A DNA stretch of 64,000 bases. Source: Selaginella moellendorffii (lineage: Eukaryota; Plantae; Lycopodiophyta). The notes beneath the pieces were generated by a model, which had not been told where the DNA came from, searched no databases, and saw only the letters and a program-made list of their open reading frames with translations. The position numbers and the translations under genes are program-made. Location of the stretch: contig NW_003314370.1 of assembly GCF_000143415.4 (NCBI RefSeq), forward strand, positions 489,517 to 553,516. The letters run 5' to 3'. Positions within the stretch are counted from its first letter, which is position 1. The number at the start of each line of letters is the position of its first letter. Shown here in pieces: positions 36,974 to 64,000 of this stretch.

Positions 36974-37073
36974 NNNNNNNNNNNNNNNNNNNNNNNNNNN
37001 NNNNNNNNNNNNNNNNNNNNNNNNNNNNNNNNNNNNNNNNNNNNNNNNNNNNNNNNNNNNNNNNNNNNNNNNN
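36974..37073. other. Assembly gap (100 N)
   Basis: Run of N. Confidence 1.
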
Positions 37074-39807
37074 ATGAACTGACCATTGGGAAGTCCAAGA
37101 CTAGAGTGAATACAGACCGACAAGCAGGGTAGCTTGGTGAAGTGTTCAAGAGTTAGCTCTAGTTCCCCCGGGAGATCGAATGGTCGATGCTCGCAGTCCA
37201 AGTGTGGGTGGCACTACCTACTTGGATACCTGGCGTGGCTCAACGGAACCTCGCTCTAAGCCCATGGCTAGAACACCTAAAGGCAGAAGGCAGGGAGAAT
37301 ACCCATGAGGCTCGCGTAGGGCTATGGTGTTCCAAAATGTTGTCCCAAAGTCCCAGATTGTGGAAAGGAAGAGGAGTAGCTCTTTGGTGTGGTAATCAAG
37401 GACACAGTCACACAATGAGGAAGTCCCAAATGATAGTGGGACTTAGTGGTCGGGCCTATGGGCCTTGATCTAGTGGCAATGTTGGCAAACACGGCCATGG
37501 ACAGAAAGGGACTTGGTGGGGACCAGAATAGAGATATTGGGGAAGGCTGTTCCCCATATTTGTGGGCATCCTAAAGATGCTAAGGAGTGGATCTAGGATG
37601 ATCATTCATGGACGGATGGTCTAGTCGTTGAGAGACGGGATTGCAACACAAGTGGTGTTAGACCACTAATGTGACCAAGGTGAATGGGTATGGCGTAGCG
37701 TAATGAGTTGATATGTTGGTGGTACCTTGGGGTGTCGGTCATGGGATCGGACACGTGGAGCACTTGAACCAAGTGCAAAGGTTAAGTGGCATGGATGCCA
37801 TTCTCGGGGTTAGCAGACCCCAAGTCCTGAATTGGACTTATGGAGGTTGTGAGTGAGACTCTTCCTAGTGATCGGAGAGGGGGTTAGGTGACTAAAGTAG
37901 AATGGAAAAATTAGTCTCTTACAATTTGGTATTGGAGTTGTTCCTTAGTCCGACTTTTATTGATGGCTAAGTATATCACCACTTGTATTGAATTGGAAGG
38001 TCTTAGGTATGGACTTATCCTTAAGGAGTAGCATGTCAAGAAGATATGGCTCTCCACTCAAGTTCATGCATGAACTTGTGCACAATGTGATGGATAGAAA
38101 AGGGCTAGTAAAGGAACAACTTTGGGATCTTGGGAACAATATAAGGGTTTCTTCAGAGAGTTGAGGATGTGATTCAAATAAGCATTTGGCTCAGCAAACT
38201 GGCTAAGGTAGTTATGATAAACAACTATATTTGGGATCACGGGAAAGATAGAGACTCCAGAACAATAAAGGAGTTACAAGATTATCCTCAAATAGTTGAG
38301 GTTGGTGCTCATCAATTTGAGACCAGAATTAATAACCGTGGGAGGTCAAATATAAAAAAGGACACAGGTCCTTGAAATGGTACCTGAGGCTACTTTTTAT
38401 AAATGCTAGAATAAACCCAAGGAGTTGGGGGTGTGCTTAGAGGATGAGTTGGTATTCTCATCATATGGACGGATAGTCCTAAAGGGCAAAAGTAGCCCAT
38501 AGAGAACGGAAAATAATAAAGTGTTGGAGTAACATTTGCAAAGATGGTCTTTATGAGTAAGGCATGAATACACACAATTGTATTCCAGCGAGCTAACACC
38601 TGAAAAATAGGACCTTACGGGTCAGTGGATTAACAAAGTCCATAAATGTGGGATGACTTGAGTAGAGTCAAGAAATGGTCCTAAGGGATTGGTAAAAAAC
38701 ATTTGGACTATGGTGTGTTGTGCCCCATGAAGGTTGGGGAGGATCATAAAATCCAAGTATGAGAATGGTGAGTATCTTATTGATAGCAGAATGTGCCATA
38801 CTAAAGCGGTGGGGAAGGTGTTCCCAGAAGAAAACAACTTTAACATAAAGTTGTGTGTAAACCTTATGGTGCAGTGCTAACGGATAGTTGGTATGAGAAA
38901 GAATTGTAGTGGTTTTGGTAAGGACCTAGACACAAGTAAGAAGTGTCATAAAGGTAGGCTCGTGGAGCTGATGGTGTGGAGACATCGAATGTGCTAAGAC
39001 ATGATGCTTTAAGGTGAGGTGATGGGTTCACGAGAACCCCTTCTCAAAGGAAACCTAATGGAAATGGGAATGGCATAACCTAAGCGGAAGGCATGCAATT
39101 GGAGTGTGGTGACCTAGATAATGATGGAGGTGTGAAAGCATCAACAATGAGTTGTAAGACTTGACAACTATGAGGCAACTAAGCAAAAGGTGCAAAATAA
39201 TCGGTTAAACTAGTAAAAGGTAGCTACCCAAGACTTCTAGCATAAAGAAGTTAAATATACCCGTATAGGGGATAAATTGCTTATGTTGCGATATAGTAAG
39301 TCAATGTCGTAAAAGGGAATGCTCATTGTCAAAGAGGCCATCATTAGGACACCTAAACACTCGAGAACACAAGGAGGTGGTGTTTGGTGTCGCAAGGGCA
39401 ATCCAAGGGACTAAATCCCTAGTGAATGATGGATAAAAGGTGCTATCCAAACGTCGAAGGTTGTGGAGATGGGAGAAGACCATCTACCCGAATTGGACAA
39501 AGCTAAAAATGGAATTTTGGCAAGGCTAGTGATGGGCATATAAAGGCCCATAAGTAGCAACATTAATCCCGGTGTGTGGAATTATAAGGTGACCATACTC
39601 GGATTGAAGAACCACTCCCTAGGCTATCAGGTAGGTTCATCTTTAAGAATACTTGCTAAAGCATGGTAGAAAATGCAAATCTATCCTCCTAGTCTGGAGA
39701 AGAATATCCAAAGGAAATGTATGAGGCCAAAAAGCAAATAGTAATGGGATAAAACCAAACCATAGGAATTAAAGAGCATAACTAAAGGTGAGTTGAGAGT
39801 GGAGAAT
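37074..39807 (+). mobile_element. Heavily decayed second LTR retrotransposon (LTR end at 37923, tRNA-Met-like PBS, internal relics)
   Basis: ...CTCTTACA followed by TTTGGTATTGGAG (degenerate TGGTATCAGAG); purine-rich, stop-ridden internal region; ends abruptly at the LRR fragment. Confidence 0.6.
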
Positions 39808-40056
39808 CTGAGCTCCCTCGACCTCTCGCACAACTCGTTTAGCGGGGAGATCCCTTCGGAGCTTGGCCAGTGTCAAATGCTGGTGAGCTTGGATCTGAGC
39901 TACAACCTTCTGTCCGGAGAAATCCCGTCCTTCCTCGAGAGCTTGTCGCGGCTGGAAGTTCTTTGCTTGCCTGGGAACTCTTTCTCTGGTGGCGTGCCCG
40001 AGTGGATCGTCCGGAGCTCCAGGAGCTCAACCTCGCGGAGAACGATCTCCGGGTGA
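39808..40056 (+). pseudogene. LRR receptor-kinase fragment (copy A, 5'-truncated at the retroelement junction)
   Basis: LSSLDLSHNSFSGEIPSELGQCQMLVSLDLSYNLLSGEIP. Confidence 0.85.
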
Positions 40057-40490
40057 TAGATTCATGCGGAAAAGATTGTCGATAGGACCACGTAGGGCTG
40101 GATAATGGCGTGTCAAAATATACACTTATTGCTGCGCTTTGTGGAGGATTAGATTCTTCCATGGAATTATTTGAAGATTTTGGGGAATTGGCAAGCAAGG
40201 TTCCCAGTCCACTGGATTGAAAGTGGCAGCGATGGCTAATTCGCGTCTAGCTTCTCTCTTTATCGCTGGCACGGATGGCCACGGACTCCAATACTTTATA
40301 TATTTTGGCTTTTTACCATTTTTTGGAGCTCCTTTAATAAAAAGTGTTCAAGTAATAAAAGGCCCTTATTTGTCACGATCATAAATTACATTCCTTCAAT
40401 TCCATATGCATTTGAACAGTATCAAGAATATTCCTCTAAAAAGGGCGAAGTTCCTTATATAAAGCCCTACACCCAACGCTACAGCGATGT

Positions 40491-41123
40491 ATGGCACAAT
40501 TAGAAGCTCAACACGTTGACAAGGTAGGCAAGCCGACTTTGATCCTCGACTTGGACGGCACACTGATTGCAACGTCTCGGCAAGCGGGGCTACACGCGAA
40601 GCTCGATTTTGTGGTGGAGTTTGATCCTCAAGAACAGCCCGTCTGGGTTTGCAAGCGCCCTGGTCTGGATGATTTCCTCAGCAAAGCATCGCAGCTTTTC
40701 GAGGTGGTGGTGTTCAGCCTGGGGAAGAGAGCGTACGTGGAGAAGATGCGGGAGAAGATCGATCCCAGTGGCTCGCTGGTGGCGTTTTGGCTGTCCAGGG
40801 ACTCTTGCAGTGGCAGTGATGCCATCAAGGAGTACAAGGACTTGAACAGCCCGAGCTTTGGGAGGGATTTGCGCAGGGTGGTGTGGGTGGATGATTTCCG
40901 GGATTCTTTCCGAATGAACCTGGAGAGCGGGATTGTGGTGCCAATGTTTCGGAACAGCAGCAGTGGCAACGATCGGGTGCTCATGGATTTGTGGCCGCAT
41001 CTGGAAACACTTGCAACTTATGGGCCTGATGTGGATGTGAGGGCTGCTCTGCTCTCACTGCCGCTCCCTCTGCTCGAATCCAACCTTGCCAGGGCAATCA
41101 GTCGCCCCAAGCTGTGCATGTAA
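40491..41123 (+). CDS. NIF/FCP1-homology (SCP/CTDSP-like) HAD phosphatase, intronless (copy A)
   Basis: TLILDLDGTLI (DxDxT), KRPGLDDFL, FEVVVFS, KDL..GRDLRRVVWVDD; TATATAAAG ~35 bp upstream. Confidence 0.9.
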   Translation: MAQLEAQHVDKVGKPTLILDLDGTLIATSRQAGLHAKLDFVVEFDPQEQPVWVCKRPGLDDFLSKASQLFEVVVFSLGKRAYVEKMREKIDPSGSLVAFWLSRDSCSGSDAIKEYKDLNSPSFGRDLRRVVWVDDFRDSFRMNLESGIVVPMFRNSSSGNDRVLMDLWPHLETLATYGPDVDVRAALLSLPLPLLESNLARAISRPKLCM

Positions 41124-41765
41124 TCCTACTGTGGTTATATATGATAAAAAGCTATGCCACGCAGAATCTTACAAGGCCGAGCAAAGCATGGCATGTAGAG
41201 GGGAGAAAATCGGAAGGAAAGGGTGTGGCTCGTTTCTCGATATGCTTGCTTGTGAAACTCTTTAATCCTTTTTGCTTCTCGTACACTGCTAGAGTAGAAG
41301 AGAGGAGCAGGATGCCGCACGGGGTCTTTTGTACGAGAGAGACAGCTCCGGCGACAAGAGATGTGAGGGGACTGCTTCTTCACAATCACTTGACATCTTT
41401 TCAAGTTCCTGATTCTGCTCGGTTCCTTGTCCCCGAGATCCATGGAGCGGGGGCTGGAATTGGCTGTGTCATTGTGCAGTCTCTTCATCTTACAGCATTT
41501 GCCCAGAGGCGGGATCCGGTGCGACGAAGCTGGTAAGGATCCAATCTTCCCTGTACATGTCACTCGCAAGACTGAAAATACCACGAAGCCCGCGCGTTCC
41601 GATCTGACCTGTTTCTCTTTTTTGCCCCTTGGTTTCAGTCACGACGGATGCCGCGCGGGGCCGCGCTGCACGGGCTACGGGCTGGACGGGCGGCAGTGAC
41701 GTGCGTCACTTTTGCGCGTTGGCATATTTCTAGGGAGCGTGGGTATATTCCTTCTTGTGCAAGCG

Positions 41766-44236
41766 ATGGCGCCGGGAGCAAGCGCTGACGATCGCGCTCG
41801 GGGCGAAGGCGATGGTGCTCCGGGCGACGGCGATCGGGATGCCGTGGCTCTGGACATTGGTAATGTGCTTAGCAGCATTTCTTTGTTCCTCATCCTCATG
41901 GATCCATGTTTTGGTCTGTCCAGGGGTCTCTATGGTCCGGGTCGCGCGTTTCTTGCCGACTCCCATGGCGGGATCGGATCTCCCCTGCCGTGGAGGCTAC
42001 CTCGAGCTCAAAGAATTCTCGACAATCCGTGAGTGTCTTGACGCGCTGCAATCCCAAGGCATCACAACGATTAAGGTCTCTAGCTCATTGAATTTTCTCG
42101 CCTCGTAGCATTTGCCATTACACAGGCCACGGGGGAGGGGGTTTTCCGGCACTCCCGCATCTTCGAAGAGCACTTGGGCATTCAACTGGAAATCCTACCC
42201 GACATGGAGTGCTTAGTAGCAGGAGCAACGTTCATGCTACAGGACGCAAAAAATCAGCAGGAACATCCTTTATTCCCGTTCCTGCTCGTCAACTTTGGCA
42301 CAGGCGTGAACATGATCAAGGTCAGGGGTCTTTCTCCACAAAAGTAGCTCCACAAAAGAAGCTAACGTGAACCTACAGGTGGAAGGCCATAATGTTTTCA
42401 AAAGAGTTTCGGGCACGACCATAGGTGGCGGTGCACTGCGCGGCCTCTCATCGCTTGCAACTTCCTGTCAAAGGTGAAACAGCAATATTCTAATGTTAAC
42501 ATGAAATTTTTTTGGTGTTTTTTTCTAGTTTTCAAAGCTTTTTGGACTTGTGCTCCAATGGAGAAAGTACTGGAGTGGATTTGCTCGTCACAGATATGCA
42601 TGGGACCACGTCAACAGAGGTAAGAACAGTGTTTTTTTTATCTAAACGTTATTCTTTTCTTTTTTACCAATAGGCCAAGCTCCCGCACTCGGCCATAGCT
42701 GCGAGTCTTGGAAAATTGAGCTGGGGTGAATCCACAGGGCATTGGCGAGAGGAGGACATTGCTATGTCACTCCTTCGGATGATAGTGAACAACATCTCCC
42801 AGATAGCTTCGCTCACCGCTGCCGGACAGAACGTGAAGAAGACTGTGTTCACCGGAAGCTTTTTGCGTGGCCCCGTGGTAAACGTGCTGAGATCTGCGAT
42901 GCAGTTCTGGTCTCCGGCAGCACAGCCAGTTTTCCTCCACAGCGATTACCTCAAAACGGCCGGTGCATTCTTGGCAGGGCCTCGGTGTTGCTCCACTCCT
43001 CCCATGACTAAAAAGGTACATTCCATTTTTGGCTACACACAACGATTGCGTTACTCCTCCTCCAGGGATACACTCCTCCTCATTTGAGGAGGGCACCGGA
43101 GCCACTTTCAGCTGCAACCAAGGATGAGCTGAGCTCAACATTGCTCAATGCCGCGCGATGCCTCAAGGCGTCCGGAGTAAGCGTTTGTTTTGAGTTGTCA
43201 CAGTGTTTCTCTAATTGTATGTGTAGGATTTGTCGGAGAGGACGTTTAATTACATTGTCAAGGATCTCTGCGGCGGTGAGCTGGGAACAAAGCACATCAA
43301 CACCAAGTTCAATGAAGAATTCACGTTGATCAAACAGCTTGGAAGAGGTGCTGACGGTGTGGTTTACATGTGCCGACACAAGTTTGACGGACAAGTGTAC
43401 GCGGTAAAGCAGGTGAGCTTGGAGTGTATGTCATGAACCAAAGCTCTCTAATCTATGCTTTGCAGATCCATGTCCGGAAAGACCTTGAGAGTGTCATGAA
43501 GGAAGCAAGAACACTTTCAACTCTGGCTCATGCAAACATTGTGAAATATCATACTTCTTGGTGGGAGGAGCAGCCTGGTGGGGGTTGTGTGGTGTACATC
43601 CAAATGCAATACTGCACGAGGTACCAGTGTGTAAAATCTTTCCCTTTTTTTTTTTTTTTTTTCCTTTTTTCGAGCTGACAAGCCATTTTTACAGCTCGTT
43701 AAAAGATATGCTGGAAGATCCAAAAGCCTTGATCCCGGTGGCAGCGTTCAACGAGCTCGTTCAAGCTGTTGAGTACCTGCATGAAAAAAAAATCATTCAC
43801 AGAGACATCGCTCCGAAGAATATCTTTTTCGACGACTATAATCGCCTGAAACTGGGAGATTTCGGGCTGGGTACGTAGTTTTCTAGTTTCCTCCTTGCCA
43901 GAGGTTCTCATATTTATTTTTCCAGCGAAGAAGAAGTTGTCGCTCCCGAGAGAGGGTGGGAAAGTTGGGACAGGCATGTACTCCTCGCCAAAGCAACTCG
44001 AGAATGAGATGGCTTCCGATATTTTCAGCCTGGGGATGATACTTTTCGAGCTCAATTGCCGCTTCTCACCCGAGAACCAAGACAGAGACTCCACGATGCA
44101 GCTGGCTAAGGATGGCATCTTCCCAAAGGAGTGGGAAATTGCAAACCAGGAATTGGCAGAGAAGATTCGGAGCATGCTACATCCAAACAGGAGCCTCAGG
44201 CCGACAGCCAGCCAGATCCTGGCTTCTCTCCCGTAG
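41766..44236 (+). CDS. Fusion of a degenerate pantothenate kinase (fumble/type II) domain and a GCN2/eIF2-alpha-type protein kinase; 11 exons, 635 aa (copy A)
   Basis: Exons 41766-41859, 41924-42075, 42126-42320, 42379-42473, 42529-42619, 42674-43015, 43066-43176, 43227-43412, 43466-43620, 43695-43870, 43926-44236. All introns are GT-AG and in phase (1908 nt). PanK motifs: ALDIG, ATGEG, FPFLLVNFGTGV, RVSGTTIGGG, IAASLGK, EDIAMSLLRMI. Kinase motifs: LGRGADG, YAVK, YIQMQYC, HRD, DFG. Confidence 0.88.
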
Positions 44237-44859
44237 AAACAACATTCCATTAGAGAATGTAATGGACCTCAGTCCCACTTTCTCACCTCCGCGGGCTAAT
44301 GGCTGTCCCCTGGTGCTAGGCTCATTCTCCACCGATCAACTTCAAGCTTCCAGCAAAATGGAATGCTTTCTCGAGGTCAAAAACCAGATCAACGACCGGT
44401 GTGAAGACCAAAGACGACCGGAGACCACGTTGGCCTCTACCCAAATGGTTGCTTCTACAATTGCATGCATGATCCATGCAATTTTGGCTCGCCTCGCTAG
44501 AGCTTGCACTGCAGCAAAAGGTGGCGGAGAGGTTGCAAAACCTTTGGCCACCACTTATTTTGAGAAAATGAGAATAAGCACACACTCAAATTTGAATAGA
44601 TAAAGCTTGATCACTAACACTGCAACATGTTGATAAGTTATGCTACCAAAGTAGAAAATTAAAAGGCATACATGCAATTGTCATCCACAAATCATTGCCC
44701 AGTGGGATTGGAAGAAGTGGTATGGCAATTCCTTGCAGATTTAACAAAATTTATGCTAGAAATTATTGTGAATAAGTTTTTTGGACAAAAGAGAGTTGAA
44801 TCTAGTAAATAAAATTGCTGTGTGTTGCATTGCATGGTTTGCTTTTGTTTTTATATTTT

Positions 44860-47598
44860 TTATTAGGATGTATAATTTGTTATGATCTGTCCAATATGCA
44901 GGTCCTATTCCTGCTTTTGTATATATTATATCTTTTATCCATATATGATCTATTAATTTATTATTACATGTGTTGTGCTTTATTATTTATATGCATCCTT
45001 CTTTCTCCATTATTGTTTGAAGTGGTTTTGCTTCTTCTTTTTGGTAGTCAATATTGAAATCTCCTGTAATTATTACTGGCTTTTTATTATCTATTTTCTG
45101 TATATATTTTTGTAGTTGTTTTATGAATATTTGTATATTTGTTCCAGGTTTTCTATGTAAATTTTTTATCTTTAATTTTTAAATTTTTTTTCTAGTGATA
45201 CATATGACATTGCCAATGTTTCTGTTTTTAGATGTTCTATGATTTATAGTCATTTGTATGCAATGTTCATGTATATATGATTTATATTTATTAAAATTTA
45301 AATCCTCATGTTTTTGTGTTCTTACTTCTTGCATACATATCATATCTGATGTTAATAATTGTGAATCACTCTCTATATCGTCTTTATGTGCAGTAATAGA
45401 TGTTGTATTTAGAACTTGTATAATTGTTTGGTTAGCTATTTTTTCTTCTTGTAAATCTATTAAATCAATTTGCTATAGTGCTTCTGTTGTCATTCTTAAT
45501 ATTTCTTTAGCTGCATCTTTATTGATTTTAATATGTTTATGTTCAATTGGTCTATATAAATGTATACCTTTTAGTGTTTGTGCTCTTGATAATGCTGTAT
45601 ATGCTTGTTCTAGATATTTTGTTTTATATGAGTCATATCCTAATTGCATAACAGTTGATCCTTGTGCTCTATGTGTTGTTCTTCTTGCGCATGGTTGTAC
45701 TGGAAATTGGGTTCTACTTATAACATAATTTTTATTTTTAGTAATATTTATTATTCTTGTTTTTTTTTATTGGTGTCCAGTTTTTTTTTTCATTATTTTT
45801 CTTTATTGTTATGTTTTCTTTAGCTCTTGTTTTTTCACCTGTTTTTATATTTGGGAATTCTATCCACATTATTTGTTTTTCTTCAATCTGGGTTACATCT
45901 TGTACTACTCCATTTGCTCCATTTACTAATCCATCTTTTGTTGTTGTATTTTGTGTTATTTCAATTGCCATGTTTTTTTTTCAAATGTAATATTTCATGT
46001 AGTCCTTGTGTTTTTTTTGTGTTATTTGGCAGCATGAAATGTGTAGGACAGGAATTTCCATGTTTGTCTTGTGCTTTTATAATTATATCTTGACTTTGTA
46101 TGTGTTGTATTATTTTTTCATTATGTGTTTTTACTTGTTCATTAGTTGCAAATATCGAATAGTATTCTGTGTTATATGTATCTGTGGTGACTTGTTTCTT
46201 TATATATTCTAGCTCTTTATCTGTTTGTTCTCATATTTTTATTTTATTTAAAGCTTTTATAAAGATTATATCATCTTTTTGCCTCATTATTTTAGTAAGT
46301 TCATAAACTTTAATATTATTTTTCCATGGGTGGTATATAGAGACATTATTTTCAGGTCCATATGTTTTTGTTGAATAAATTGGTGCTTCAAATATAGGAT
46401 TGAATTGATAGAAATCACTTGTAAATAAACAATCCATCTCACCAAAGTTTATTCCATATGTTGTTTTGAAGCTTTCACATCTTCTACTTATATCTTGTAG
46501 CATTTCTGCACTTACTATTGATATTTCATCTATTACTAAACAATTTATTGTTGAAAACTTTCTCTTGTATTTATCTAATGTGTCATTTGTTAATATTGTT
46601 TGACGTTGTTTTGATGCTTATGGTCGAAATGTAAAAGCTGAATGTATTGTTGAACCATTTATATTACAAGCTTCTTTTCATGTAGGTGTTGTTATTAATA
46701 CTGTTTGTCATGGTTCATTATTTATATCTTGGTTTGTTTTATAATATCATTTGAGTGTTTTTATAAGTGTATTTAAAAGCATTAATTTTCCAATTCCTGC
46801 TCTTGTTAAAAATAAGCACATATGTTTGTTACGTTGTTTTATTTTTTTCAATATAAAGTCATCATGTATTATTCTTTGCTTTTTATTTAGAGTTCTTAAT
46901 AATTGGTGATATTTACTAGTTTCTATAAGTTATTCATCTTGTATTATAATTGTTGTATTTGTTAATATTTATATTTTATATTTAAATTTAAGTTTTTTTA
47001 ATTTTTCATTTTTAATAAATCTTTCCCTATATCAAATTCATTTGTTTGGTTTGTATTTATTTCTTGTATATACTGTGTTTGTTCTTTTAATATTTTATTT
47101 GCTTCTTGTTCTAGATTCTCCCAATTAAATTCACTCTCATTTGTTGCTTTTTTATATATGTATTGATATTGTTTTTCATTTATTTATTCCATATTTGCTT
47201 CATATGCATATATTTTGTGTACATTTCTTTAAGATCTTCTTCTTTTCTAAATTTTTTATGTAAGATTAATCTTTCAAATGCCCATTTTCTGGATTTTTTT
47301 CTTTACTAAATTTTATATATTTAGTTATATATATATTTTTTAATGTTTTTGTGTTGTTAATTATTTTTTAATTATATATTCAGTTGTTATCTCTGCTAAT
47401 GTTAAATCTTCTAATTCTTCATGTTTTTATTTGGATATGTTAATAGTTTTTATTTGCTCATTTTTATTCTTTCTTGATAAATAATAGTATCTAGAAACAA
47501 TTTGCTACTCAGTTAAATCAATATTATTATTGAATTTTAGTTCTTTTTCTTTTTTATTTGCAGATCCTTGAAATGATAACAATTTTACATCTAGAAGT
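44860..47598 (-). mobile_element. Helentron-type (endonuclease-encoding Helitron) remnant: PIF1 helicase plus APE/EEP endonuclease (copy A, with stops)
   Basis: AGIGK, GSTIHS, IDEIS, DFYQF, ELTKIMRQ, LVNG, QFP..THRAQG, QAYTALSR; then LNTTS..H..D..SDMICMQE, GDFN, IDHIW, TDH. Confidence 0.85.
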
Positions 47599-47708
47599 TC
47601 TATCTATTCAAAATTTTTCTTTGTCATAATTATGCCCTTTATACTTAAATGCCCTTATTGCCCTTAATGTCTTTACACCCACCGGATAGATGGGTGCATC
47701 CAGATTAG
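47599..47708 (+). mobile_element. Putative miniature non-autonomous Helitron
   Basis: Starts TCTATCTA, carries three TGCCCTT motifs and a subterminal hairpin CACCCA-N9-TGGGTG (47676-47696), and ends in a degenerate CTAG (TTAG|T). Confidence 0.45.
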
Positions 47709-50381
47709 TTTTTTCTATGATTGTTTAGTTGATCAAGATTGTTTAAAGAGATTCAACAATTGAACCAAATGAACTATTTTTAGCCTAATTTCAGTAAGTA
47801 ATAATTCTCTATCTTTCAATCAACAGCTTTGTGAAGGTTGATAATTGATAATCTAGACCAGTAGAAACAATCAAAGATCTTTTACTTACTTTTCAATGTT
47901 ATTCCGTTGAAAACCATTTATGCCCTAAAGGTATATTAAATCTTTATTTAAAAGGGCCTAAAATGGGCTTATCTCTTGCGATGAGAGAAACGTGAGCACA
48001 AGTACTAGACTCGTGCATTTTTAAGTAATTGATTGCCTGCTTGATTGTATTATTTCTATATCTCTTTCTTTTGGGTTAACACCACTATCTCGCATGGATT
48101 CTGGTGTCTTGCTACTTGAGCAGCTGAATGGATCATGCAGTAGGAGATTTCTGAGGGATACCTTCAAAAAGAGGGCCAATGCTTTGTAAATCCTCAAGAT
48201 TCCTCAGCAAAATGAGTTAGGAAAGAAAGAACTTTATCAAAACAAGGTGAAATTTTCTTTTTGTAAGTCTTTTAGGAGTGGTCTTTGTCTTCTTTACACT
48301 ACACTAGGTCAAAGGATTGCACAGGGCATTGGATATAGTTAGAAGACAGATCCAGCACAAGGTGTGTGATTGTCCCTCCTTGTTTTTTCTTTCTTCCTCG
48401 TTTTTCCTTTACATTCACATAAGCTCCCATAGGATAAGAAGGTCTTGAGTAACATCCTGGCTTTGTTAGGTTTTGCAGCTGGTTTCTGAGCAAAGACTTT
48501 CAGCTTGAGCGAGGCTTTGTTGGTTGTTAGGGATGAAATATTTACTAATCTGTATAATTGGAAGTTAGAGTTGAAAGGAGATATAAACAATTTACATTAC
48601 CTTGTAATTAAGAGTGAGGCCACAATGCGTTTTATAAACTTCATTGAGCCTCTGAATTTCGTTTGAATCAACTAGTGGCAAAAATAAAGTACTTCCAAGT
48701 GTTGCTAAATCACCTAACACACTCATGCTTTTCATAATATTAAAAAATAAAAACTTTGGCATGTATCCAACATATAAATTTACTACAATATGATGATATT
48801 GCTCTTCATACTCCAGATGCATATAGAGCTGTGAAAAATATTTTAGAAATAGAAAATTAAATAGAAAAAAAACATTACCATAGTTACATCCAATGGATTA
48901 TCAGAAGAAGCAATCTTTATTTTAGGAAAAATACTAGTGTTGATTACAACAGCATGTATAGCTTGTGGATAAACTCTAGTAGCCATTAAAGATGATATAG
49001 AAGCACCTCTAGTTGGCTGTAATCTTAGTTTAACATGAAAATCATCTATAATTTGAATGATAGAAGAATCTATAATATAAAGAACTTTTTCTGAAGTTCC
49101 ATGGTGGTAAATTGGGTTTTTCTATCGTTCAACCCATCTGAATTGAGAGAATTATAATCTTGTTAATTTTTTTTAAAAAATTATGAACCTTGTAAGTGAG
49201 AAACATTTGCCAACCATAAATTTATTATATAATCACGCACATATGGATGAATTGCCATATACAGTTAAAGTTTGCAAGCCATGCCTATCTGTACAATTCA
49301 TTATATAAGTTAAATATTTTGCACTTCACAGAGTGTTCTTTGCAAGATGAACTTTATAAGTTCCATACCTAGGCAAAAAGAAAATAAACACTACAGAAAA
49401 AAAAGGATTTCAAAACCATATATAGATAAAATCTTCAACTCAAGAATCTTGGTTGAATTTACTTTTTCAAATACAAGTGATGCTATAGTGGCTTTTAGGA
49501 TGGTCAACTTTGTTCTCTTTGCTTGTGAAACTACAAAACCAAAAAGAAATAAATCAAGAAATACTAAAGAATAAAGAGAAAAACCAAACCTTCATAAGAA
49601 TTTGTTTTTGTTGACAAATCCTTAGCGGGTGACGACTGAACAATATCGATAGCACAATCCAAATTTGACATATCTACGTGACTGATTAAATAAAATTACC
49701 TCTAGTTAATTTATATTAGTAAAAAGAGCCAAAAATAAACTAGACTTCACTTTGAAGAATCAACTTTGAGCTAAAAATTAAAATCCGTCAACTTGCCAAA
49801 CTTAGGGTTAGGGTAGACAATAAACCAATTCCGCAGGTGACAAACCTTTTGAACCTTTTCATGTACTGACTCTCCTTGTTGTAAACATCATCCCCAGATA
49901 CTTATCATCATCCAAGCTGAAGCTAGAAGCAGCCTGACTCCACTCCTCAGCAGCTACAATCTCCCTCCCTTCGTCCGTTGCTTTAAAAAAGAGGAAGGAA
50001 TAGGAATAGAAAGATTGTTTTTTGCATGGATTGTCACTGTCCATCAATTTGCTCTTCCCAATGACTCCTCTTTGAAAAGACTCTCCCTCCTCCACTGATC
50101 TTTGTTTTCTACCCACTGCCCACTCACATAATAGGGAGCCATACAAAGGAAGATCTAAGCTCCATCTATGGATGCATTCCAGGTTAATTGATTGATTCTG
50201 GGCAATCAATCAGTACTGCTGTGGTGGGTTTCTGATCCTGGATCATGGCTCTCAGCTCAAACCTCCAGGGAGAGGCAATCCTCAATCAATTCACTAGTTT
50301 AACATGATTTTCTTGACGCTTGCCAAGGACAAGAGCAATCCATTGGAGCCAGTGGAGAATGCAGCGGTTGGGAACGACGAT

Positions 50382-51430: not shown

Positions 51431-52117
51431 AAAAGATTCCAAATGTTTCTCTTATTTGCTTGAATCATAGGATGATCTTTAAGTTCATTTGCTTCTTCTT
51501 CTGGTTTTCCAGCTTCTTTGCTTTGAGCGCAACTTAGAAGGATTAGCAGTTTTCGCTTTCAGGACGGGTGGTGTGTCTCTCATCGTGCATTTGTGGCGGC
51601 GGTAAGGCTTTTCCAGACTTGTGGATGGTAAAGAGAAAGCCAGCCACGCCATAGCCAAGCCAGCACTCGTATACCAGGTTAAAGAGGTCTGTCACTGATA
51701 ATAGATGGATCCAGAGGGAGAGAGAGAGAGAGAGCAGTGGCATCCAACGCCCTTTCAATCAAGCCATCCATCCAAAGTTCTATAATGCTCCACCACGCTG
51801 ATCTTGGATCTCGCCATGGTTACACGCCAGTTGCTCGAGTCATGGCGAGCGAGAGTTTTTGCATTGTGGGGTCACGAAAAACTTCCTTTTTTTTGTCGTC
51901 GCGAGTTGACTGCCTGGAAGTTGAAAGGATCGAAAGCTCTCTCGTCGTGGATAGCATAGATTTCTAGTGTTTTTTCTTCACACTTTCTCGTCGGATCCAT
52001 GGCGGTGGTGGCGCTGTTGCATTGAGCGATCGAGAGCTGCTCTCGCTAATGGGTCATCGAAGAACCCGATCTCTAGCGAGGAAAAGTGAGGATAGATTGG
52101 CGGAAGCAAGACTGGAT

Positions 52118-52945
52118 ATGGTGGTGGTGATGGTGTTCTTCCTTTCCCTGGCTTTACCCGTTGAGAGCTCCGAGAACGATGATGTGCTGGGACTCATCGT
52201 CTTCAAGGCGGATCTTCACGACCCACGACGAGCGCTGGCCTCCTGGAGCGAGGATTCGGCGAGCCCGCGTAACTGGACCGGGATCCAGTGTAGCCCACAA
52301 TCCGGGACAGTCACCCAAGTCACGCTCGATGGCCTGGAGCTCTCGGGACCGCTGGGACGGGGCCTCCTCAAGCTCGACCACCTCCAGGTGCTCTCGCTCG
52401 CCAGGAACAATCTCTCCGCGGATTCGCGTGCTCGAATCCTTGCGAAACCTGAGCTTGAGCCACAACGCTCTCTCGGGTCCCCTCCCTGGAGCCAGCCTCG
52501 CCAGTTTGGAGCTCCGGGAGTGTGCCCACCCGAGCTCTTCGCCCATTGGTCCAAGTCCCTGAGGTACGTGTTTCTGCAGCTCGAGGGCGATCTCCCGGAC
52601 TCCATCGCCAGCTGCGAGAGCTTGGAAGCTCTGGGAGCGTCCGAGAACCGGCTCTCGGGCTCCATCCCAGCCGGAGTTGGATCGCTGTCCCGGCTGAGCT
52701 CCCTCGACCTCTCGCACAACTCGTTGAGCGGGGAGATCCCTCCGGAGCTTGGCCAGTGTCAAATGCTGGTGAGCTTGGATCTGAGCTACAACCTCCTGTC
52801 CGGAGAAATCCCGTCCTTCCTCGAGAGCTTGTCGCGGCTGGAAGTTCTTCGCTTGCCTGGGAACTCTTTCTCTGGTGGCGTGCCCGAGTGGATCGTCCGG
52901 AGCTCCAGGAGCTCAACCTCGCGGAGAACGATCTCCGGGTGATAG
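52118..52945 (+). pseudogene. IRK/PXC2-like (LRR-RLK VII) ectodomain fragment, frameshifted, without TM or kinase domain
   Basis: Signal peptide; NDDVLGLIVFKADLHDP...SWSED; cap Cys replaced (SPRNW); LRRs split across frames. Confidence 0.85.
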
Positions 52946-53376
52946 ATTCATGCGGAAAAGATTGTCGATAGGACCACGTAGGGCTGGATAATGGCGTGTC
53001 AAAATATACGCTTATTGCTGCGCTTTGTGGAGGATTAGATTCTTCCATGGAATTATTTGAAGATTTTGGGGAATTGGCAAGCAAGGTTCCCAGTCCACTG
53101 GATTGAAAGTGGCAGCGATGGCTAATTCGCGTCTAGCTTCTCTCTTTATCGCTGGCACGGATGGCCACGGACTCCAATACTTTATATATTTTGGCTTTTT
53201 ACCATTTTTTGGAGCTCCTTTAATAAAAAGTGTTCAAGTAATAAAAGGCCCTTATTTGTCACGATCATAAATTACATTCCTTCAATTCCATATGCATTTG
53301 AACAGTATCAAGAATATTCCTCTAAAAAGGGCGAAGTTCCTTATATAAAGCCCTACACCCAACGCTACAGCGATGT

Positions 53377-54009
53377 ATGGCACAATTAGAAGCTCAACAC
53401 GTTGACAAGGTAGGCAAGCCGACTTTGATCCTCGACTTGGACGGCACACTGATTGCAACGTCTCGGCAAGCGGGGCTACACGCGAAGCTCGATTTTGTGG
53501 TGGAGTTTGATCCTCAAGAACAGCCCGTCTGGGTTTGCAAGCGCCCTGGTCTGGATGATTTCCTCAGCAAAGCATCGCAGCTTTTCGAGGTGGTGGTGTT
53601 CAGCCTGGGGAAGAGAGCGTACGTGGAGAAGATGCGGGAGAAGATCGATCCCAGTGGCTCGCTGGTGGCGTTTTGGCTGTCCAGGGACTCTTGCAGTGGC
53701 AGTGATGCCATCAAGGAGTACAAGGACTTGAACAGCCCGAGCTTTGGGAGGGATTTGCGCAGGGTGGTGTGGGTGGATGATTTCCGGGATTCTTTCCGAA
53801 TGAACCTGGAGAGCGGGATTGTGGTGCCAATGTTTCGGAACAGCAGCAGTGGCAACGATCGGGTGCTCATGGATTTGTGGCCGCATCTGGAAACACTTGC
53901 AACTTATGGGCCTGATGTGGATGTGAGGGCTGCTCTGCTCTCACTGCCGCTCCCTCTGCTCGAATCCAACCTTGCCAGGGCAATCAGTCGCCCCAAGCTG
54001 TGCATGTAA
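53377..54009 (+). CDS. NIF/FCP1-homology HAD phosphatase (copy B)
   Basis: Translation identical to 40491-41123. Confidence 0.9.
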   Translation: MAQLEAQHVDKVGKPTLILDLDGTLIATSRQAGLHAKLDFVVEFDPQEQPVWVCKRPGLDDFLSKASQLFEVVVFSLGKRAYVEKMREKIDPSGSLVAFWLSRDSCSGSDAIKEYKDLNSPSFGRDLRRVVWVDDFRDSFRMNLESGIVVPMFRNSSSGNDRVLMDLWPHLETLATYGPDVDVRAALLSLPLPLLESNLARAISRPKLCM

Positions 54010-54651
54010 TCCTACTGTGGTTATATATGATAAAAAGCTATGCCACGCAGAATCTTACAAGGCCGAGCAAAGCATGGCATGTAGAGGGGAGAAAATCGGA
54101 AGGAAAGGGTGTGGCTCGTTTCTCGATATGCTTGCTTGTGAAACTCTTTAATCCTTTTTGCTTCTCGTACACTGCTAGAGTAGAAGAGAGGAGCAGGATG
54201 CCGCACGGGGTCTTTTGTACGAGAGAGACAGCTCCGGCGACAAGAGATGTGAGGGGACTGCTTCTTCACAATCACTTGACATCTTTTCAAGTTCCTGATT
54301 CTGCTCGGTTCCTTGTCCCCGAGATCCATGGAGCGGGGGCTGGAATTGGCTGTGTCATTGTGCAGTCTCTTCATCTTACAGCATTTGCCCAGAGGCGGGA
54401 TCCGGTGCGACGAAGCTGGTAAGGATCCAATCTTCCCTGTACATGTCACTCGCAAGACTGAAAATACCACGAAGCCCGCGCGTTCCGATCTGACCTGTTT
54501 CTCTTTTTTGCCCCTTGGTTTCAGTCACGACGGATGCCGCGCGGGGCCGCGCTGCACGGGCTACGGGCTGGACGGGCGGCAGTGACGTGCGTCACTTTTG
54601 CGCGTTGGCATATTTCTAGGGAGCGTGGGTATATTCCTTCTTGTGCAAGCG

Positions 54652-57122: not shown

Positions 57123-57745
57123 AAACAACATTCCATTAGAGAATGTAATGGACCTCAGTCCCACTTTCTCACCTCCGCGGGCTAATGGCTGTCCCCTGGT
57201 GCTAGGCTCATTCTCCACCGATCAACTTCAAGCTTCCAGCAAAATGGAATGCTTTCTCGAGGTCAAAAACCAGATCAACGACCGGTGTGAAGACCAAAGA
57301 CGACCGGAGACCACGTTGGCCTCTACCCAAATGGTTGCTTCTACAATTGCATGCATGATCCATGCAATTTTGGCTCGCCTCGCTAGAGCTTGCACTGCAG
57401 CAAAAGGTGGCGGAGAGGTTGCAAAACCTTTGGCCACCACTTATTTTGAGAAAATGAGAATAAGCACACACTCAAATTTGAATAGATAAAGCTTGATCAC
57501 TAACACTGCAACATGTTGATAAGTTATGCTACCAAAGTAGAAAATTAAAAGGCATACATGCAATTGTCATCCACAAATCATTGCCCAGTGGGATTGGAAG
57601 AAGTGGTATGGCAATTCCTTGCAGATTTAACAAAATTTATGCTAGAAATTATTGTGAATAAGTTTTTTGGACAAAAGAGAGTTGAATCTAGTAAATAAAA
57701 TTGCTGTGTGTTGCATTGCATGGTTTGCTTTTGTTTTTATATTTT

Positions 57746-60468: not shown

Positions 60469-61049
60469 AGTTCTGCCATTCAAATTTTTTCTTTGTCATA
60501 ATTTTTCCCTTTATACTTAAATGCCATTATTGCCCTTAATGTCCTTACACCCACCGGATATATGGGTGCATCAAGATTAATTTTCTCTAAGATTGTTTAA
60601 AGAGATTCAACAATCGAACCGAATGAACTATTTTTAGCCTAATTTCAGTAAGTAATAATTCTCTATCTTTCAATCAATAGCTTTGTGAGGGTTGTTAATT
60701 GATAATCTAGACCAGTAGAAACAATCAAAAATCTTTTACTTACTTTTCAATGTTATTCCTTTGAAAGCCATTTATGCCCTAAAGCTATATTAAATTTTTA
60801 TTTAAAAGGGCCTAAAATGGGATTATCTCTTGCGATGAGAGAAACGTGAGCACAAGTACTAGACTCATGCATTCTTAAGTAATTGACTGCCTGCTCGATT
60901 GTATTATTTTTAGATCTCTTTCTTTTGGGTTAACGCCACTATCTCGCATGGATTCTGGGGCCTTGCTGCTTGAGCATCTGAATGGATCATGCAGTAGGAG
61001 ATTTCTGAGGGATACCTTCAAAAAGAGGGTTAATGCTTTGTAAATCCTC

Positions 61050-63830: not shown

Positions 63831-64000
63831 TATAAATTTATTATATAATCACGCACATATGGATGAATTGCCATATACAGTTAAAGTTTGCAAGCCATGC
63901 ATATTTGTACAATCCATTATATAAGTTAAATATTTTGCACTTCACAGAGTGTTCTTTGCAAAATGAACTTTATAAGTTCCATACCTAGGCTGTCCATCAA

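What the first reader, a model, noticed from the sequence alone, without database searches (positions are those of the whole stretch)
41766..44236. Pantothenate-kinase-like domain fused to a GCN2/eIF2-alpha-type kinase: a candidate CoA/pantothenate-sensing protein kinase
Seen in sequence: ten canonical GT-AG introns (50-74 bp) splice phase-perfectly into one 635-aa ORF, including the two linker junctions (43015|43066 and 43176|43227), with no stop between the halves. The N-terminal half has the type II PanK motif series (ALDIG, ATGxG, PFLLVNFGTGV, SGTTIGGG, IAASLGK, EDIAMSLLRMI, FWS). The C-terminal half has eIF2-alpha-kinase features (F.EEF..LG.G, RHKFDGQVYAVK, HANIVKYHTSW, YIQMQYC), and HRDIAPKNIFFD..LGDFGLAK closely resembles plant GCN2 (HRDxTPNNIFFD..IGDFGLAK). 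Established knowledge: plant PanK is either stand-alone or fused to a DUF89 phosphatase. GCN2 is the only recognised plant eIF2-alpha kinase and senses uncharged tRNA through a catalytically dead HisRS-like domain. Type II PanKs are dimers that bind acyl-CoA as a feedback inhibitor. Inference: a PanK fold has replaced the GCN2 sensor, giving a dimerising, metabolite-gated kinase. I know of no described protein with this architecture.
Basis: partly seen in the sequence, partly recalled or inferred. Interest (0 to 1): 0.92.

Follow-up and report, generated by a model that had tools for sequence, protein, structure and literature searches.

The report
Pantothenate-kinase-like domain fused to stress kinase
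The spikemoss Selaginella moellendorffii has a real, intact gene, present in identical tandem copies, that joins a heavily altered copy of a vitamin-B5 (coenzyme A pathway) enzyme to a protein kinase related to the kinases that shut down translation under stress; the combination was found nowhere else, and its function is untested.

Summary
Ten GT-AG introns (50-74 bp) splice 41766-44236(+) into one 635-aa ORF. That ORF is identical to RefSeq XP_002990529.2, which is misnamed "wee1-like protein kinase 2". An identical second copy lies at 54652-57122.

Pfam finds Fumble (residues 66-309) and Pkinase (393-632). No other PanK+kinase protein appeared among the best hits listed in the four database searches. 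No paper mentions this gene.

The PanK half shares all five of its internal introns, in position and phase, with the native Selaginella PanK2 gene. Its branch is more than ten times longer than the median. It has lost the catalytic Glu (E138→D) and four of five other active-site residues, so it is probably a pseudo-PanK.

The kinase half keeps its catalytic residues. It scores best against GCN2, HRI, PERK and PKR. Its nearest relative (39% identity) is a multi-copy family of stand-alone 357/358-aa kinases in the same species, not GCN2. It lacks the equivalents of PKR Thr446 and Thr487, so eIF2α is an unproven substrate.

The kinase has no start codon of its own, so the fusion is very likely genuine.

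Reading: a new variant of a PEK-like kinase with an enzyme-derived N-terminal module. CoA sensing is speculative. The scan also flagged this stretch in an overlapping window.

The parts
41766..44236 (+). Copy 1 of the fusion gene: complete CDS, 11 exons and 10 GT-AG introns, 635 aa
   Evidence: identical to RefSeq protein P0152; Fumble + Pkinase
41766..43015 (+). Exons 1-6: PanK-like (Fumble/ASKHA) half, aa 1-323. The folded core is aa 27-310; aa 1-21 are disordered
   Evidence: Pfam; PANK1/3, E about 1e-37 to 1e-36; AF2 model; Foldseek PANK1/2/3 and CAB1, E 1e-23; five introns shared with native PanK2
42201..42203 (+). Codon GAC = Asp108, at the position of the catalytic Glu138 of human PANK3. 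The preceding codon is Pro107, at the position of Asp137
   Evidence: Alignments; column conservation; residue roles from PMC8366970
43016..43065 (+). Intron 6, the fusion junction between the PanK half and the kinase-derived part. If retained, the PanK ORF stops 23 codons later (130-aa ORF P0001)
43066..43322 (+). Exon 7 and the first part of exon 8 (with intron 7, 43177-43226, between them): a disordered linker (to about aa 340), then a two-helix N-terminal extension (aa 342-358 and 364-374). The extension is homologous to the N-terminal region of the stand-alone Selaginella kinases. There is no in-frame ATG
   Evidence: alignment aa 337-396 to P0272 aa 49-108, continuous across the exon 7/8 junction; AF2
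43323..44236 (+). Protein kinase domain, aa 393-635 (exons 8-11), PEK-like. Present: GRGADG 399-404, Lys421, Glu435, HRD 509-511, Asn516, DFG 529-531, Thr548
43798..43821 (+). Catalytic loop HRDIAPKN (aa 509-516). The usual HRDLK lysine is Ala513, and a Lys sits two residues later
   Evidence: Sequence
44069..44071 (+). Codon CCC = Pro581, at the helix alphaG position of PKR Thr487
   Evidence: role of Thr487 from PMC11556786
54652..57122 (+). Copy 2 of the fusion gene, 100% identical in nucleotide sequence to copy 1, introns included
39808..48485 (.). First unit of the direct segmental duplication (partner 52694-61320, 97.9% identity). It has zero differences between about 40.1 and 45 kb. It carries an LRR fragment, the NIF gene, the fusion gene and an AT-rich tail
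40491..41123 (+). Upstream neighbour: an intronless 210-aa NIF/FCP1-like phosphatase ORF (second copy at 53377-54009). A 38%-identical NIF gene also sits next to the paralogous stand-alone kinase

Best explanation
This is one genuine, selectively maintained chimeric gene of Selaginella moellendorffii, present here in two identical tandem copies. Shown: the N-terminal half is a complete type II pantothenate-kinase fold. It descends by DNA-level duplication from a plant PanK gene, because all five of its internal introns match that gene. It has since evolved more than ten times faster than ordinary plant PanKs. It has replaced the catalytic Glu and most of the residues that hold pantothenate or stabilise the active site. 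Shown: the C-terminal half is a compact protein kinase of the PEK (eIF2-alpha kinase) type. It has no kinase insert and keeps all core catalytic residues. It belongs to a lineage-specific family of small stand-alone kinases, whose first ~40-50 residues, including the start codon, were replaced by the PanK module. Inferred: the PanK-like domain no longer makes 4'-phosphopantothenate. Instead it acts as a regulatory module, most likely a constitutive or ligand-modulated dimeriser. Type II PanKs are obligate dimers, and PEK kinases are switched on by dimerisation of their kinase domains driven by an N-terminal sensor. The PanK-like dimer would bring two kinase domains together for activation. Its ligand (nucleotide, CoA-related or something new) and the kinase's substrate (eIF2-alpha or another protein) are unknown.
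For: Gene model and identity to the RefSeq protein. Domains. Fold. Evidence that the fusion is real: (1) there is no in-frame ATG between the end of the PanK domain and the glycine loop; (2) the kinase half (313 codons, four introns) is only 39-42% identical to its nearest paralogue, yet it is fully open and keeps the G-loop, Lys421, Glu435, HRD, Asn516, DFG and Thr548, so it must be translated, and that is possible only through exon 6; (3) homology to the paralogue's N-terminal extension runs uninterrupted across the exon 7/8 junction. Origin of the PanK half: five of five introns match native PanK2 in position and phase, and the half sits in the land-plant PanK group with a terminal branch of 4.05 against a median of 0.35. 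Loss of PanK chemistry: 66 of 154 near-invariant plant PanK columns are changed. The changes are D137P, E138D, S195N, Y254H and Y258S in PANK3 numbering, and the P-loop changes GG to GV and K to R. The fold core is kept: 36 columns are invariant across all 54 aligned PanKs, the fusion included, and the long helix EDIAMSLLRMIVNNISQIASL is well conserved. PEK affinity: the PDB ranking is GCN2, HRI, PERK, PKR (1e-34 to 1e-25), then MYT1 (4e-25), with no WEE1 in the top 60. The best database hits after the Selaginella paralogues are PERK, oomycete PEK and HRI-like kinases. Motifs present: YIQMQYC, FNEEF..LGRG, SPxQ and the alphaG D-R.
Against: No transcript evidence could be obtained, so the exon 6/7 junction rests on ORF logic and gene predictions. 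No orthologue was found in any other species, so purifying selection could not be measured. The copies are identical, which rules out dN/dS between them. Dimerisation and ligand binding are inferred from family knowledge, not tested. Glu to Asp at the catalytic base is conservative, Arg207 and the GGG loop are kept, so residual enzymatic activity is not excluded. The kinase has unusual substitutions (HRD-I-Ala, SPK instead of APE-type SPE) that could reduce its activity.
Confidence: 0.6

Rival explanations
1. CoA/pantothenate-sensing eIF2-alpha kinase. The PanK-like domain still binds pantothenate or (acyl-)CoA and gates a true eIF2-alpha Ser51-type kinase. This would give Selaginella a second, metabolite-controlled integrated-stress-response kinase.
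For: The kinase scores best against all four eIF2-alpha kinases and carries several PEK motifs. The PanK fold is intact, with Arg207, Ala269 and the GGG loop retained. There is a precedent in GCN2's HisRS-like pseudo-enzyme sensor (established knowledge). [quoted passage not shown]
Against: Five of the six side-chain residues named as binding pantothenate or stabilising the active site are replaced, and a 14-residue loop is deleted. The PKR Thr487 equivalent is Pro581. Thr487 is one of the few highly constrained PKR sites, and prolines generally disrupt PKR (PMC11556786). The Thr446 equivalent is Gly543. Only 7 of 18 PEK-signature columns match. The tree cannot separate PEK from MYT1 affinity.
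Confidence: 0.12
2. Two adjacent genes wrongly joined by gene predictors: a short PanK-like gene that ends at the stop 23 codons into 'intron 6', and a separate kinase gene.
For: If intron 6 is retained, the PanK ORF closes at about 43086 (P0001). The junction lies in a region predicted to be disordered. No transcript data were found.
Against: There is no in-frame ATG for the kinase anywhere between the PanK domain and beta-2 of the kinase. The out-of-frame ATGs in exon 7 run into stops (sequence). Two independent annotations (JGI, two models; RefSeq) use the same two junctions. The kinase half has clearly been kept open by selection.
Confidence: 0.1
3. A young chimeric gene without a maintained function, for example a by-product of transposon-associated duplication, on its way to becoming a pseudogene.
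For: It was found in one species only. It lies in a repeat-rich, duplicated 12.9-kb unit with a decayed PIF1/Helitron-like remnant downstream. The PanK half has a very long branch. The kinase motifs show odd substitutions.
Against: At about 60% amino-acid divergence from every relative, a 1905-nt ORF with ten precise splice sites and no stop or frameshift would not be expected to survive without selection. The PanK fold core and all kinase catalytic residues are retained.
Confidence: 0.1
4. A bifunctional enzyme: an active pantothenate kinase (Asp108 serving as the base) physically coupled to a protein kinase.
For: Glu to Asp is chemically conservative. Arg207, the phosphate-2 glycines and the GGG loop are kept.
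Against: Glu138 is 100% conserved and Asp137 99% conserved in 115 plant PanKs. The Tyr254/Tyr258 partners are also lost. The P-loop Gly and Lys are changed. Rate acceleration of more than tenfold is typical of released catalytic constraint. The species keeps a normal PanK2 (P0216).
Confidence: 0.08

Closest known systems
GCN2 (eIF2-alpha kinase 4), with its HisRS-like pseudo-enzyme sensor
   Same: A PEK-type kinase domain is controlled by a domain derived from a metabolic enzyme that has lost its catalytic residues. Activation by dimerisation is the family rule. GCN2 kinase domains are among the best PDB matches.
   Different: There is no RWD domain, pseudokinase, HisRS-like domain or C-terminal dimerisation domain. 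The enzyme-derived module is N-terminal and of a different fold (ASKHA/PanK). There is no kinase insert. No specific phylogenetic affinity to GCN2 was found.
Stand-alone 'eIF2-alpha kinase-like' proteins of S. moellendorffii (XP_024523577 and its cluster, 357/358 aa, 17 cluster members)
   Same: They are the nearest relatives (39-42% identity; clade support 100/99). They share the N-terminal helical extension, the HRDIAP catalytic loop, SPx instead of SPE, Pro at the alphaG Thr487 position, the DFGL|AK intron, and a NIF phosphatase gene as neighbour.
   Different: They have their own start codon, a ~48-aa N-terminus and no PanK domain. Four of the five intron positions differ.
Human PANK4 pseudo-pantothenate kinase (PanK-like domain + DUF89 phosphatase)
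   Same: It is a type II PanK fold that has lost the catalytic Glu138 and is fused to another catalytic domain. It is cited as a pseudo-pantothenate kinase in PMC8366970 (reference 26).
   Different: The partner here is a protein kinase, not a DUF89 phosphatase. The substitutions differ: here E138D with Arg207 kept. From memory, and not checked here, PANK4 has E138V and R207W.
Plant PanK1 / PanK2 (Fumble alone, or Fumble + ARMT1-like DUF89)
   Same: The fold and five intron positions are shared. The best sequence hits are plant PanKs at 35-44% identity.
   Different: Its Fumble score is about a third of that of ordinary plant PanKs (215 against about 490-600 bits). The active-site residues are replaced. 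There is no DUF89; a kinase domain follows instead.
WEE1 / MYT1 kinases (the RefSeq product name)
   Same: MYT1 is the next-best kinase family after the four eIF2-alpha kinases. A Selaginella+MYT1 clade is not rejected (AU p = 0.39).
   Different: No WEE1 appears among the 60 best PDB matches. The YIQMQYC motif, the pre-kinase FNEEF motif and the alphaG D-R are of PEK type. The product name is not supported.

Membership tests
Type II pantothenate kinase (Pfam Fumble PF03630) | Significant match to the family profile over the whole domain | tested here: met
   214.7 bits against a cut-off of 28.5; residues 66-309 on profile positions 58-333. The first 57 profile positions did not align.
Type II pantothenate kinase (Pfam Fumble PF03630) | ASKHA/PanK three-dimensional fold | tested here: met
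   AF2 core pLDDT above 90. Foldseek best hits are PANK1/3/2 and yeast CAB1, E 3.5e-23, TM 0.61-0.66.
Type II pantothenate kinase (Pfam Fumble PF03630) | Catalytic glutamate (human PANK3 Glu138) | tested here: not met
   Asp108 (and Asp137 is Pro107). Glu is present in 100% of 115 plant PanKs.
Type II pantothenate kinase (Pfam Fumble PF03630) | Pantothenate-binding and active-site-stabilising residues (Ser195, Arg207, Tyr254', Tyr258') | tested here: not met
   Asn144, Arg156 (kept), His203 and Ser207 (roles from PMC8366970).
Type II pantothenate kinase (Pfam Fumble PF03630) | Nucleotide-binding glycine motifs (DIGG(S/T)..K; ATGGGA; G in the adenosine motif) | tested here: inconclusive
   DIGVS..R, ATGEGV and FTGSF deviate, but NxGxG and GTxxGGG are kept.
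Type II pantothenate kinase (Pfam Fumble PF03630) | Pantothenate phosphorylation and homodimer formation | not testable with these tools
   Needs the recombinant protein.
eIF2-alpha kinases (PEK family) | Active protein kinase domain most similar to PEK members | tested here: met
   Pkinase 146 bits. All catalytic residues are present. The 17 best PDB hits are GCN2, HRI, PERK and PKR. Foldseek: PERK, GCN2, PKR.
eIF2-alpha kinases (PEK family) | Phylogenetic placement inside PEK to the exclusion of other kinases | tested here: inconclusive
   It lies inside the PEK+MYT1 group (96/97). With PEK and MYT1 outside, support is only 64/88. The MYT1 sister alternative is not rejected, p = 0.39. No plant GCN2 or WEE1 sequence was available.
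eIF2-alpha kinases (PEK family) | Kinase insert between beta-4 and beta-5 | tested here: not met
   Only WWEEQPGGGCVVY lies between the strands. The domain spans 250 aa, against 330-540 aa in PERK, HRI and GCN2 rows.
eIF2-alpha kinases (PEK family) | Helix alphaG threonine needed for eIF2-alpha recognition (PKR Thr487) | tested here: not met
   Pro581; Thr is present in 91% of PEK rows (PMC11556786).
eIF2-alpha kinases (PEK family) | Activation-loop threonines (PKR Thr446 and Thr451) | tested here: inconclusive
   The Thr446 position is Gly543 (Thr in 96% of PEK rows). Gly450-Thr451 are kept as Gly547-Thr548.
eIF2-alpha kinases (PEK family) | Phosphorylation of eIF2-alpha Ser51 | not testable with these tools
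   Needs an in vitro or yeast assay.
GCN2 specifically | RWD, pseudokinase, HisRS-like and C-terminal domains | tested here: not met
   Pfam finds only Fumble and kinase-family models (Pkinase and overlapping, weaker matches) on the 635-aa protein.
WEE1-like kinases (RefSeq name) | Best similarity to WEE1 | tested here: not met
   No WEE1 among the 60 best PDB matches or the 120 best database hits.

The most novel reading that the evidence does not exclude
The PanK-like domain still binds a CoA-pathway metabolite (CoA, acyl-CoA, pantothenate or 4'-phosphopantetheine). Through ligand-dependent dimer rearrangement it switches a kinase that phosphorylates eIF2-alpha. This would be a second, metabolite-gated integrated-stress-response kinase in a land plant, built on the same logic as GCN2's HisRS-like sensor but from a different enzyme fold.
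Probability: 0.12. Interest if true: 0.85.

Novelty: new variant of a known kind. Interest (0 to 1): 0.55.

Why it matters
PEK kinases are the standard example of one kinase domain coupled to interchangeable sensor domains: dsRNA for PKR, haem for HRI, unfolded protein for PERK, uncharged tRNA for GCN2. Plants are thought to have only GCN2. This gene adds a domain partner not described before, a degenerate pantothenate kinase. It also shows that Selaginella carries an expanded family of small PEK-like kinases, next to NIF phosphatases in the two kinds of locus examined, that nobody has studied. If the PanK-like module binds a CoA-related ligand, the gene would link central acyl-carrier metabolism directly to protein phosphorylation, and possibly to translation. 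Even if it does not, it is a clean natural example of a new regulatory domain forming by gene duplication, fusion and loss of catalysis. On the practical side, the RefSeq product name is wrong, and the UniProt/JGI model is truncated by a scaffold end.

Tried and rejected
(1) I searched for other PanK+kinase proteins four ways: the exon-6 peptide against 1.84 billion cluster representatives (local phmmer of the kinase half against the 150 best hits); the full-length protein; the kinase region; and the 130-aa unspliced ORF against 5.8 billion proteins. Only this locus's own models came back. Limits: only the top 120-150 hits are listed, candidate lengths are restricted, and other Selaginella genomes may be absent from the databases.

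(2) P0003 (667 aa) and P0123 (616 aa) looked like possible fusions by length. They are plant PanKs with a partly duplicated Fumble domain and no kinase.

(3) Expression evidence: a literature search for the locus tags and accessions found nothing. The supplements of the Selaginella expression-atlas preprint do not contain the gene identifiers. Logan-derived proteins are absent for this gene, and none appear among the listed sources for the native PanK2 or the paralogues, so that absence is uninformative.

(4) dN/dS: the window's two copies and a third at a scaffold end are identical across the gene. The nearest paralogue is only 39% identical, so no meaningful estimate is possible.

(5) A single AF2 run on the full-length protein was dropped, because MAFFT interleaved PanK and kinase rows (alignment A1). 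The halves were modelled separately, so the inter-domain geometry and the dimer were not modelled.

(6) A shared origin of intron 6 with intron 1 of the stand-alone kinase gene: the positions nearly coincide (about aa 36), but the phases differ (0 against 1) and the alignment there is weak. No claim is made.

(7) Rfam over the whole window found nothing.

Full report
OBSERVATION. I rebuilt the gene model from the raw sequence. Eleven exons between 41766 and 44236 on the + strand are joined by ten GT...AG introns of 64, 50, 58, 55, 54, 50, 50, 53, 74 and 55 bp. They give a 1908-nt CDS encoding 635 aa. Translated exon by exon, exons 3-6 hit Pfam Fumble at profile positions 83-162, 164-193, 195-222 and 226-333. 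Exons 8-11 hit Pkinase at 2-31, 41-80, 103-144 and 158-259. The pieces abut along both profiles, so the junctions are correct and not a chance product of GT/AG dinucleotides. The intron sizes match those of the native PanK2 gene of the same genome, which are 43-78 bp.

WHAT IS ALREADY IN THE DATABASES. Searching the largest PanK exon against 1.84 billion representative proteins returned a 396-aa protein that is 100% identical. Its cluster holds three S. moellendorffii entries:
- EFJ08406 / XP_024520126 / UniProt D8T4S3 (396 aa, named "eukaryotic translation initiation factor 2-alpha kinase").
- EFJ08470 (351 aa).
- XP_002990529.2 = XP_024520098.1 (635 aa, named "wee1-like protein kinase 2").
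The 635-aa RefSeq protein equals my model residue for residue. It scores Fumble 214.7 bits (residues 66-309) and Pkinase 146.3 bits (393-632). The 396-aa JGI model is short because that copy sits at the very end of scaffold GL377674.1. No paper in the library mentions any of these identifiers. A search combining Fumble or pantothenate kinase with protein-kinase-domain fusion terms also found nothing.

COPIES AND CONTEXT. The window holds a direct segmental duplication, 39808-48485 against 52694-61320, at 97.9% identity. The two units have no difference at all between about 40.1 and 45 kb. A second gene copy at 54652-57122 is therefore identical, introns included. The differences pile up in an AT-rich tail (45-48.5 kb, GC 0.20-0.30). 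That tail contains a weak PIF1-helicase-like remnant on the minus strand (E = 2.7e-4, below the Pfam cut-off). A third copy at a scaffold end is identical across the part of the gene it holds. Immediately upstream, at 40491-41123(+), lies an intronless 210-aa NIF/FCP1-like phosphatase ORF (122.6 bits).

THE PanK HALF. The best sequence relatives are plant PanK1 and PanK2 at 35-44% identity, including the species' own PanK2 at 37%. I mapped the exons of that native gene and aligned the proteins. All five introns inside the PanK half fall at the same alignment position and in the same phase as introns of native PanK2:
- after DIG, phase 1;
- after TIK, phase 0;
- after IKV, phase 0;
- after SCQ / GCK, phase 2;
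- before the AKL / IGL segment, phase 0.
The native gene has four further introns in this region that the fusion lacks. So the half is a DNA-level duplicate of a plant PanK gene. It is not a retrocopy or a foreign gene.

In a maximum-likelihood tree this half falls in the land-plant PanK polytomy. Its terminal branch is 4.05 substitutions per site, against a median of 0.35 and 0.04-0.35 for the named plant PanKs. Of 154 columns that are at least 97% conserved in 115 plant PanKs, 66 are changed. Against human PANK3 (alignment), and using the residue roles given in PMC8366970, the changes are:
- Asp137 to Pro107;
- catalytic Glu138 to Asp108;
- Ser195 to Asn144;
- Tyr254 to His203;
- Tyr258 to Ser207;
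- Arg207 is kept (Arg156) and Ala269 is kept.
The P-loop DIGG(S/T)..K reads DIGVS..R, ATGGGA reads ATGEGV, and a 14-residue loop is deleted.

The fold, however, is intact. Thirty-six columns are invariant across all 54 aligned PanKs, the fusion included; among them are NxGxG, Arg156 and the GGG loop. AlphaFold gives pLDDT above 90 for 181 residues; only residues 1-21, 214-220 and 314-340 fall below 50. Foldseek returns human PANK1/3/2 and yeast CAB1 at E of about 1e-23. I read this as a pseudo-PanK: structure maintained, ancestral chemistry released.

THE KINASE HALF. The domain has GRGADG (399-404), Lys421, Glu435, HRD (509-511), Asn516, DFG (529-531) and Gly547-Thr548. Against solved structures, the 17 best sequences all belong to the four eIF2-alpha kinases: GCN2 1.5e-34, HRI 7e-33, PERK 9e-32, PKR 6.5e-28 and yeast GCN2 3e-26. 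MYT1 follows at 4e-25. No WEE1 is in the top 60. The AF2 model (pLDDT 87) matches PERK, GCN2 and PKR best (TM 0.77-0.84 on the target), then MYT1. In the 5.8-billion-protein search, the closest non-self hit is a 358-aa S. moellendorffii protein (40% identity over 98% of the region). After it come animal PERKs, oomycete PEKs, HRI-like proteins and MYT1.

That 358-aa protein represents a cluster of 17 near-identical RefSeq proteins from many scaffolds, all stand-alone kinases of 357/358 aa. In the tree, the fusion kinase and these proteins form a clade (100/99). The clade lies inside a PEK+MYT1 group (96/97) that is separate from other kinases. Inside that group nothing is resolved: grouping with PEK and leaving MYT1 outside has 64/88 support, and a MYT1 sister position is not rejected (AU p = 0.39). 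Of 18 columns that distinguish PEK rows from the non-PEK rows, the fusion matches 7 exactly, with Lys for Arg at three more and Asp for Glu at one. The stand-alone kinases match 5 and MYT1 matches 4.

Several features count against a classical eIF2-alpha kinase:
- There is no beta4-beta5 insert.
- The position of PKR Thr446 is Gly543.
- The position of PKR Thr487 in helix alphaG is Pro581. [quoted passage not shown]
- The HRDLK lysine is Ala513, with a Lys two residues on.
- The APE-type Glu is Lys555.
Pro at the Thr487 position and the HRDIAP loop are shared with the stand-alone paralogues. They are therefore family traits, not decay.

IS THE FUSION REAL? BLASTP homology to the stand-alone kinases starts at residue 337 of the fusion, which aligns to their residue 49. 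It runs without a gap across the exon 7/8 junction. AF2 folds this part into two helices, residues 342-358 and 364-374, that precede the kinase domain. So the "linker" is the native N-terminal extension of the kinase. What the fusion lacks is the first ~40-50 residues of those kinases, including the start codon. Between the end of the PanK domain and strand beta-2 of the kinase there is no in-frame ATG, and the out-of-frame ATGs in exon 7 run into stops. The kinase half is about 60% diverged from its nearest relative and has a different intron pattern; only the DFGL|AK intron is shared. Yet it is open over 313 codons, with every catalytic residue in place. That requires long-term selection on a translated product, and translation can only enter from exon 6 or further upstream. 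The two independent annotations (three models) use the same two junctions. The weak point is the 43015|43066 junction itself. It lies in a disordered segment, is not covered by homology, and could not be checked against transcripts. If intron 6 is retained, a stand-alone PanK-like protein ending 23 codons later would result (P0001).

HOW IT PROBABLY WORKS. Shown: the protein has a complete but catalytically altered PanK fold, a flexible linker, a helical extension and a catalytically equipped PEK-like kinase. Established knowledge: type II PanKs are obligate homodimers with active sites built from both protomers (PMC8366970), and PEK kinases are activated when regulatory domains bring the kinase domains together. 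Inference: the PanK-like module acts as a dimerising and possibly ligand-binding regulatory domain for the kinase. The long helix EDIAMSLLRMIVNNISQIASL is among the best-conserved parts; from memory, it belongs to the PanK dimer interface. Which ligand, if any, and which substrate, remain open. I put eIF2-alpha at roughly one chance in four, and CoA or pantothenate gating of an eIF2-alpha kinase at about 0.12.

NEIGHBOURHOOD. The stand-alone kinase loci L002 and L003 carry a NIF phosphatase gene 430 bp away, in divergent orientation. Its product is 38% identical to the NIF ORF upstream of the fusion gene, the same divergence as the kinases show. The kinase-NIF pair therefore predates the split of the two kinase lineages and may be a functional kinase/phosphatase pair. 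I did not follow this further.

COMPARISON AND NOVELTY. Plant PanKs in the hit list are either Fumble alone or Fumble plus the DUF89/ARMT1-like domain. No hit other than this locus combines PF03630 with PF00069. [quoted passage not shown] In logic, the closest precedents are GCN2's HisRS-like pseudo-enzyme sensor and PANK4's pseudo-PanK domain. I file this as a new variant of a known kind: a PEK-like kinase with a new, enzyme-derived N-terminal module. It is present in sequence databases under a wrong name and has not been described in the searched literature. The same stretch was also flagged by the scan in an overlapping window (s1-419363).

VERDICT. Interest is moderate (0.55). The architecture is genuinely unusual and testable. 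Against that, it was found in one species only, there is no expression or orthologue evidence, and the attractive "CoA-sensing eIF2-alpha kinase" reading runs against the substitutions seen in both halves.

Noticed in passing
window 39808-48485 and 52694-61320 (also 48489-49374 vs 63129-63990): A tandem segmental duplication of about 12.9 kb. The two units have zero differences between about 40.1 and 45 kb (NIF gene, fusion gene, introns and spacers). They differ by 2-10% in the AT-rich tail. This could be a very recent duplication, gene conversion or an assembly artefact. A third copy, identical across the part of the gene it holds, sits at the end of scaffold GL377674.1 (L001).
   Followed up: partly
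window 40491-41123 (+) and 53377-54009 (+); L002/L003 7104-7571 (-): A NIF/FCP1-like phosphatase gene lies next to the PEK-like kinase both here and at the paralogous stand-alone kinase loci (38% identity between the NIF proteins). The orientation differs: tandem here, divergent there. This may be a conserved kinase-phosphatase gene pair.
   Followed up: partly
L002, L003 8001-9353 (+); protein cluster of P0272: S. moellendorffii carries a multi-copy family (17 clustered RefSeq proteins on many scaffolds) of stand-alone 357/358-aa PEK-like kinases. They have HRDIAPHN, lack the catalytic-loop lysine, and have Pro at the PKR Thr487 position. They appear to be unstudied.
   Followed up: partly
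window 44500-48500, esp. 46234-46503 (-): An AT-rich block (GC 0.20-0.32) lies downstream of the gene. It contains a short ORF with a weak PIF1-like helicase match (E = 2.7e-4, below the Pfam cut-off). This may be a decayed Helitron-type element and may be relevant to how the unit was duplicated.
   Followed up: no
proteins P0003 (667 aa) and P0123 (616 aa): Two database PanKs (P0003 reads like a plant PanK) carry one and a half Fumble domains, i.e. an internal partial tandem duplication. These are either real variants or annotation artefacts.
   Followed up: no
window 39793-40056 (+) and 52022-52942 (+): LRR receptor-like ORFs (LRRNT_2 + LRR) sit at the start of each duplicated unit. The first copy is only a fragment.
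   Followed up: no
window 11216-14359 (+): A long intronless PPR protein gene (1047 aa, E motif).
   Followed up: no
window 36974-37073: An assembly gap of 100 N inside retrotransposon-like sequence.
   Followed up: no
RefSeq XP_002990529.2 / XP_024520098.1; UniProt D8T4S3: The product name 'wee1-like protein kinase 2' is not supported by any comparison made here. The UniProt/JGI entry (396 aa) is truncated because its copy lies at a scaffold end.
   Followed up: yes
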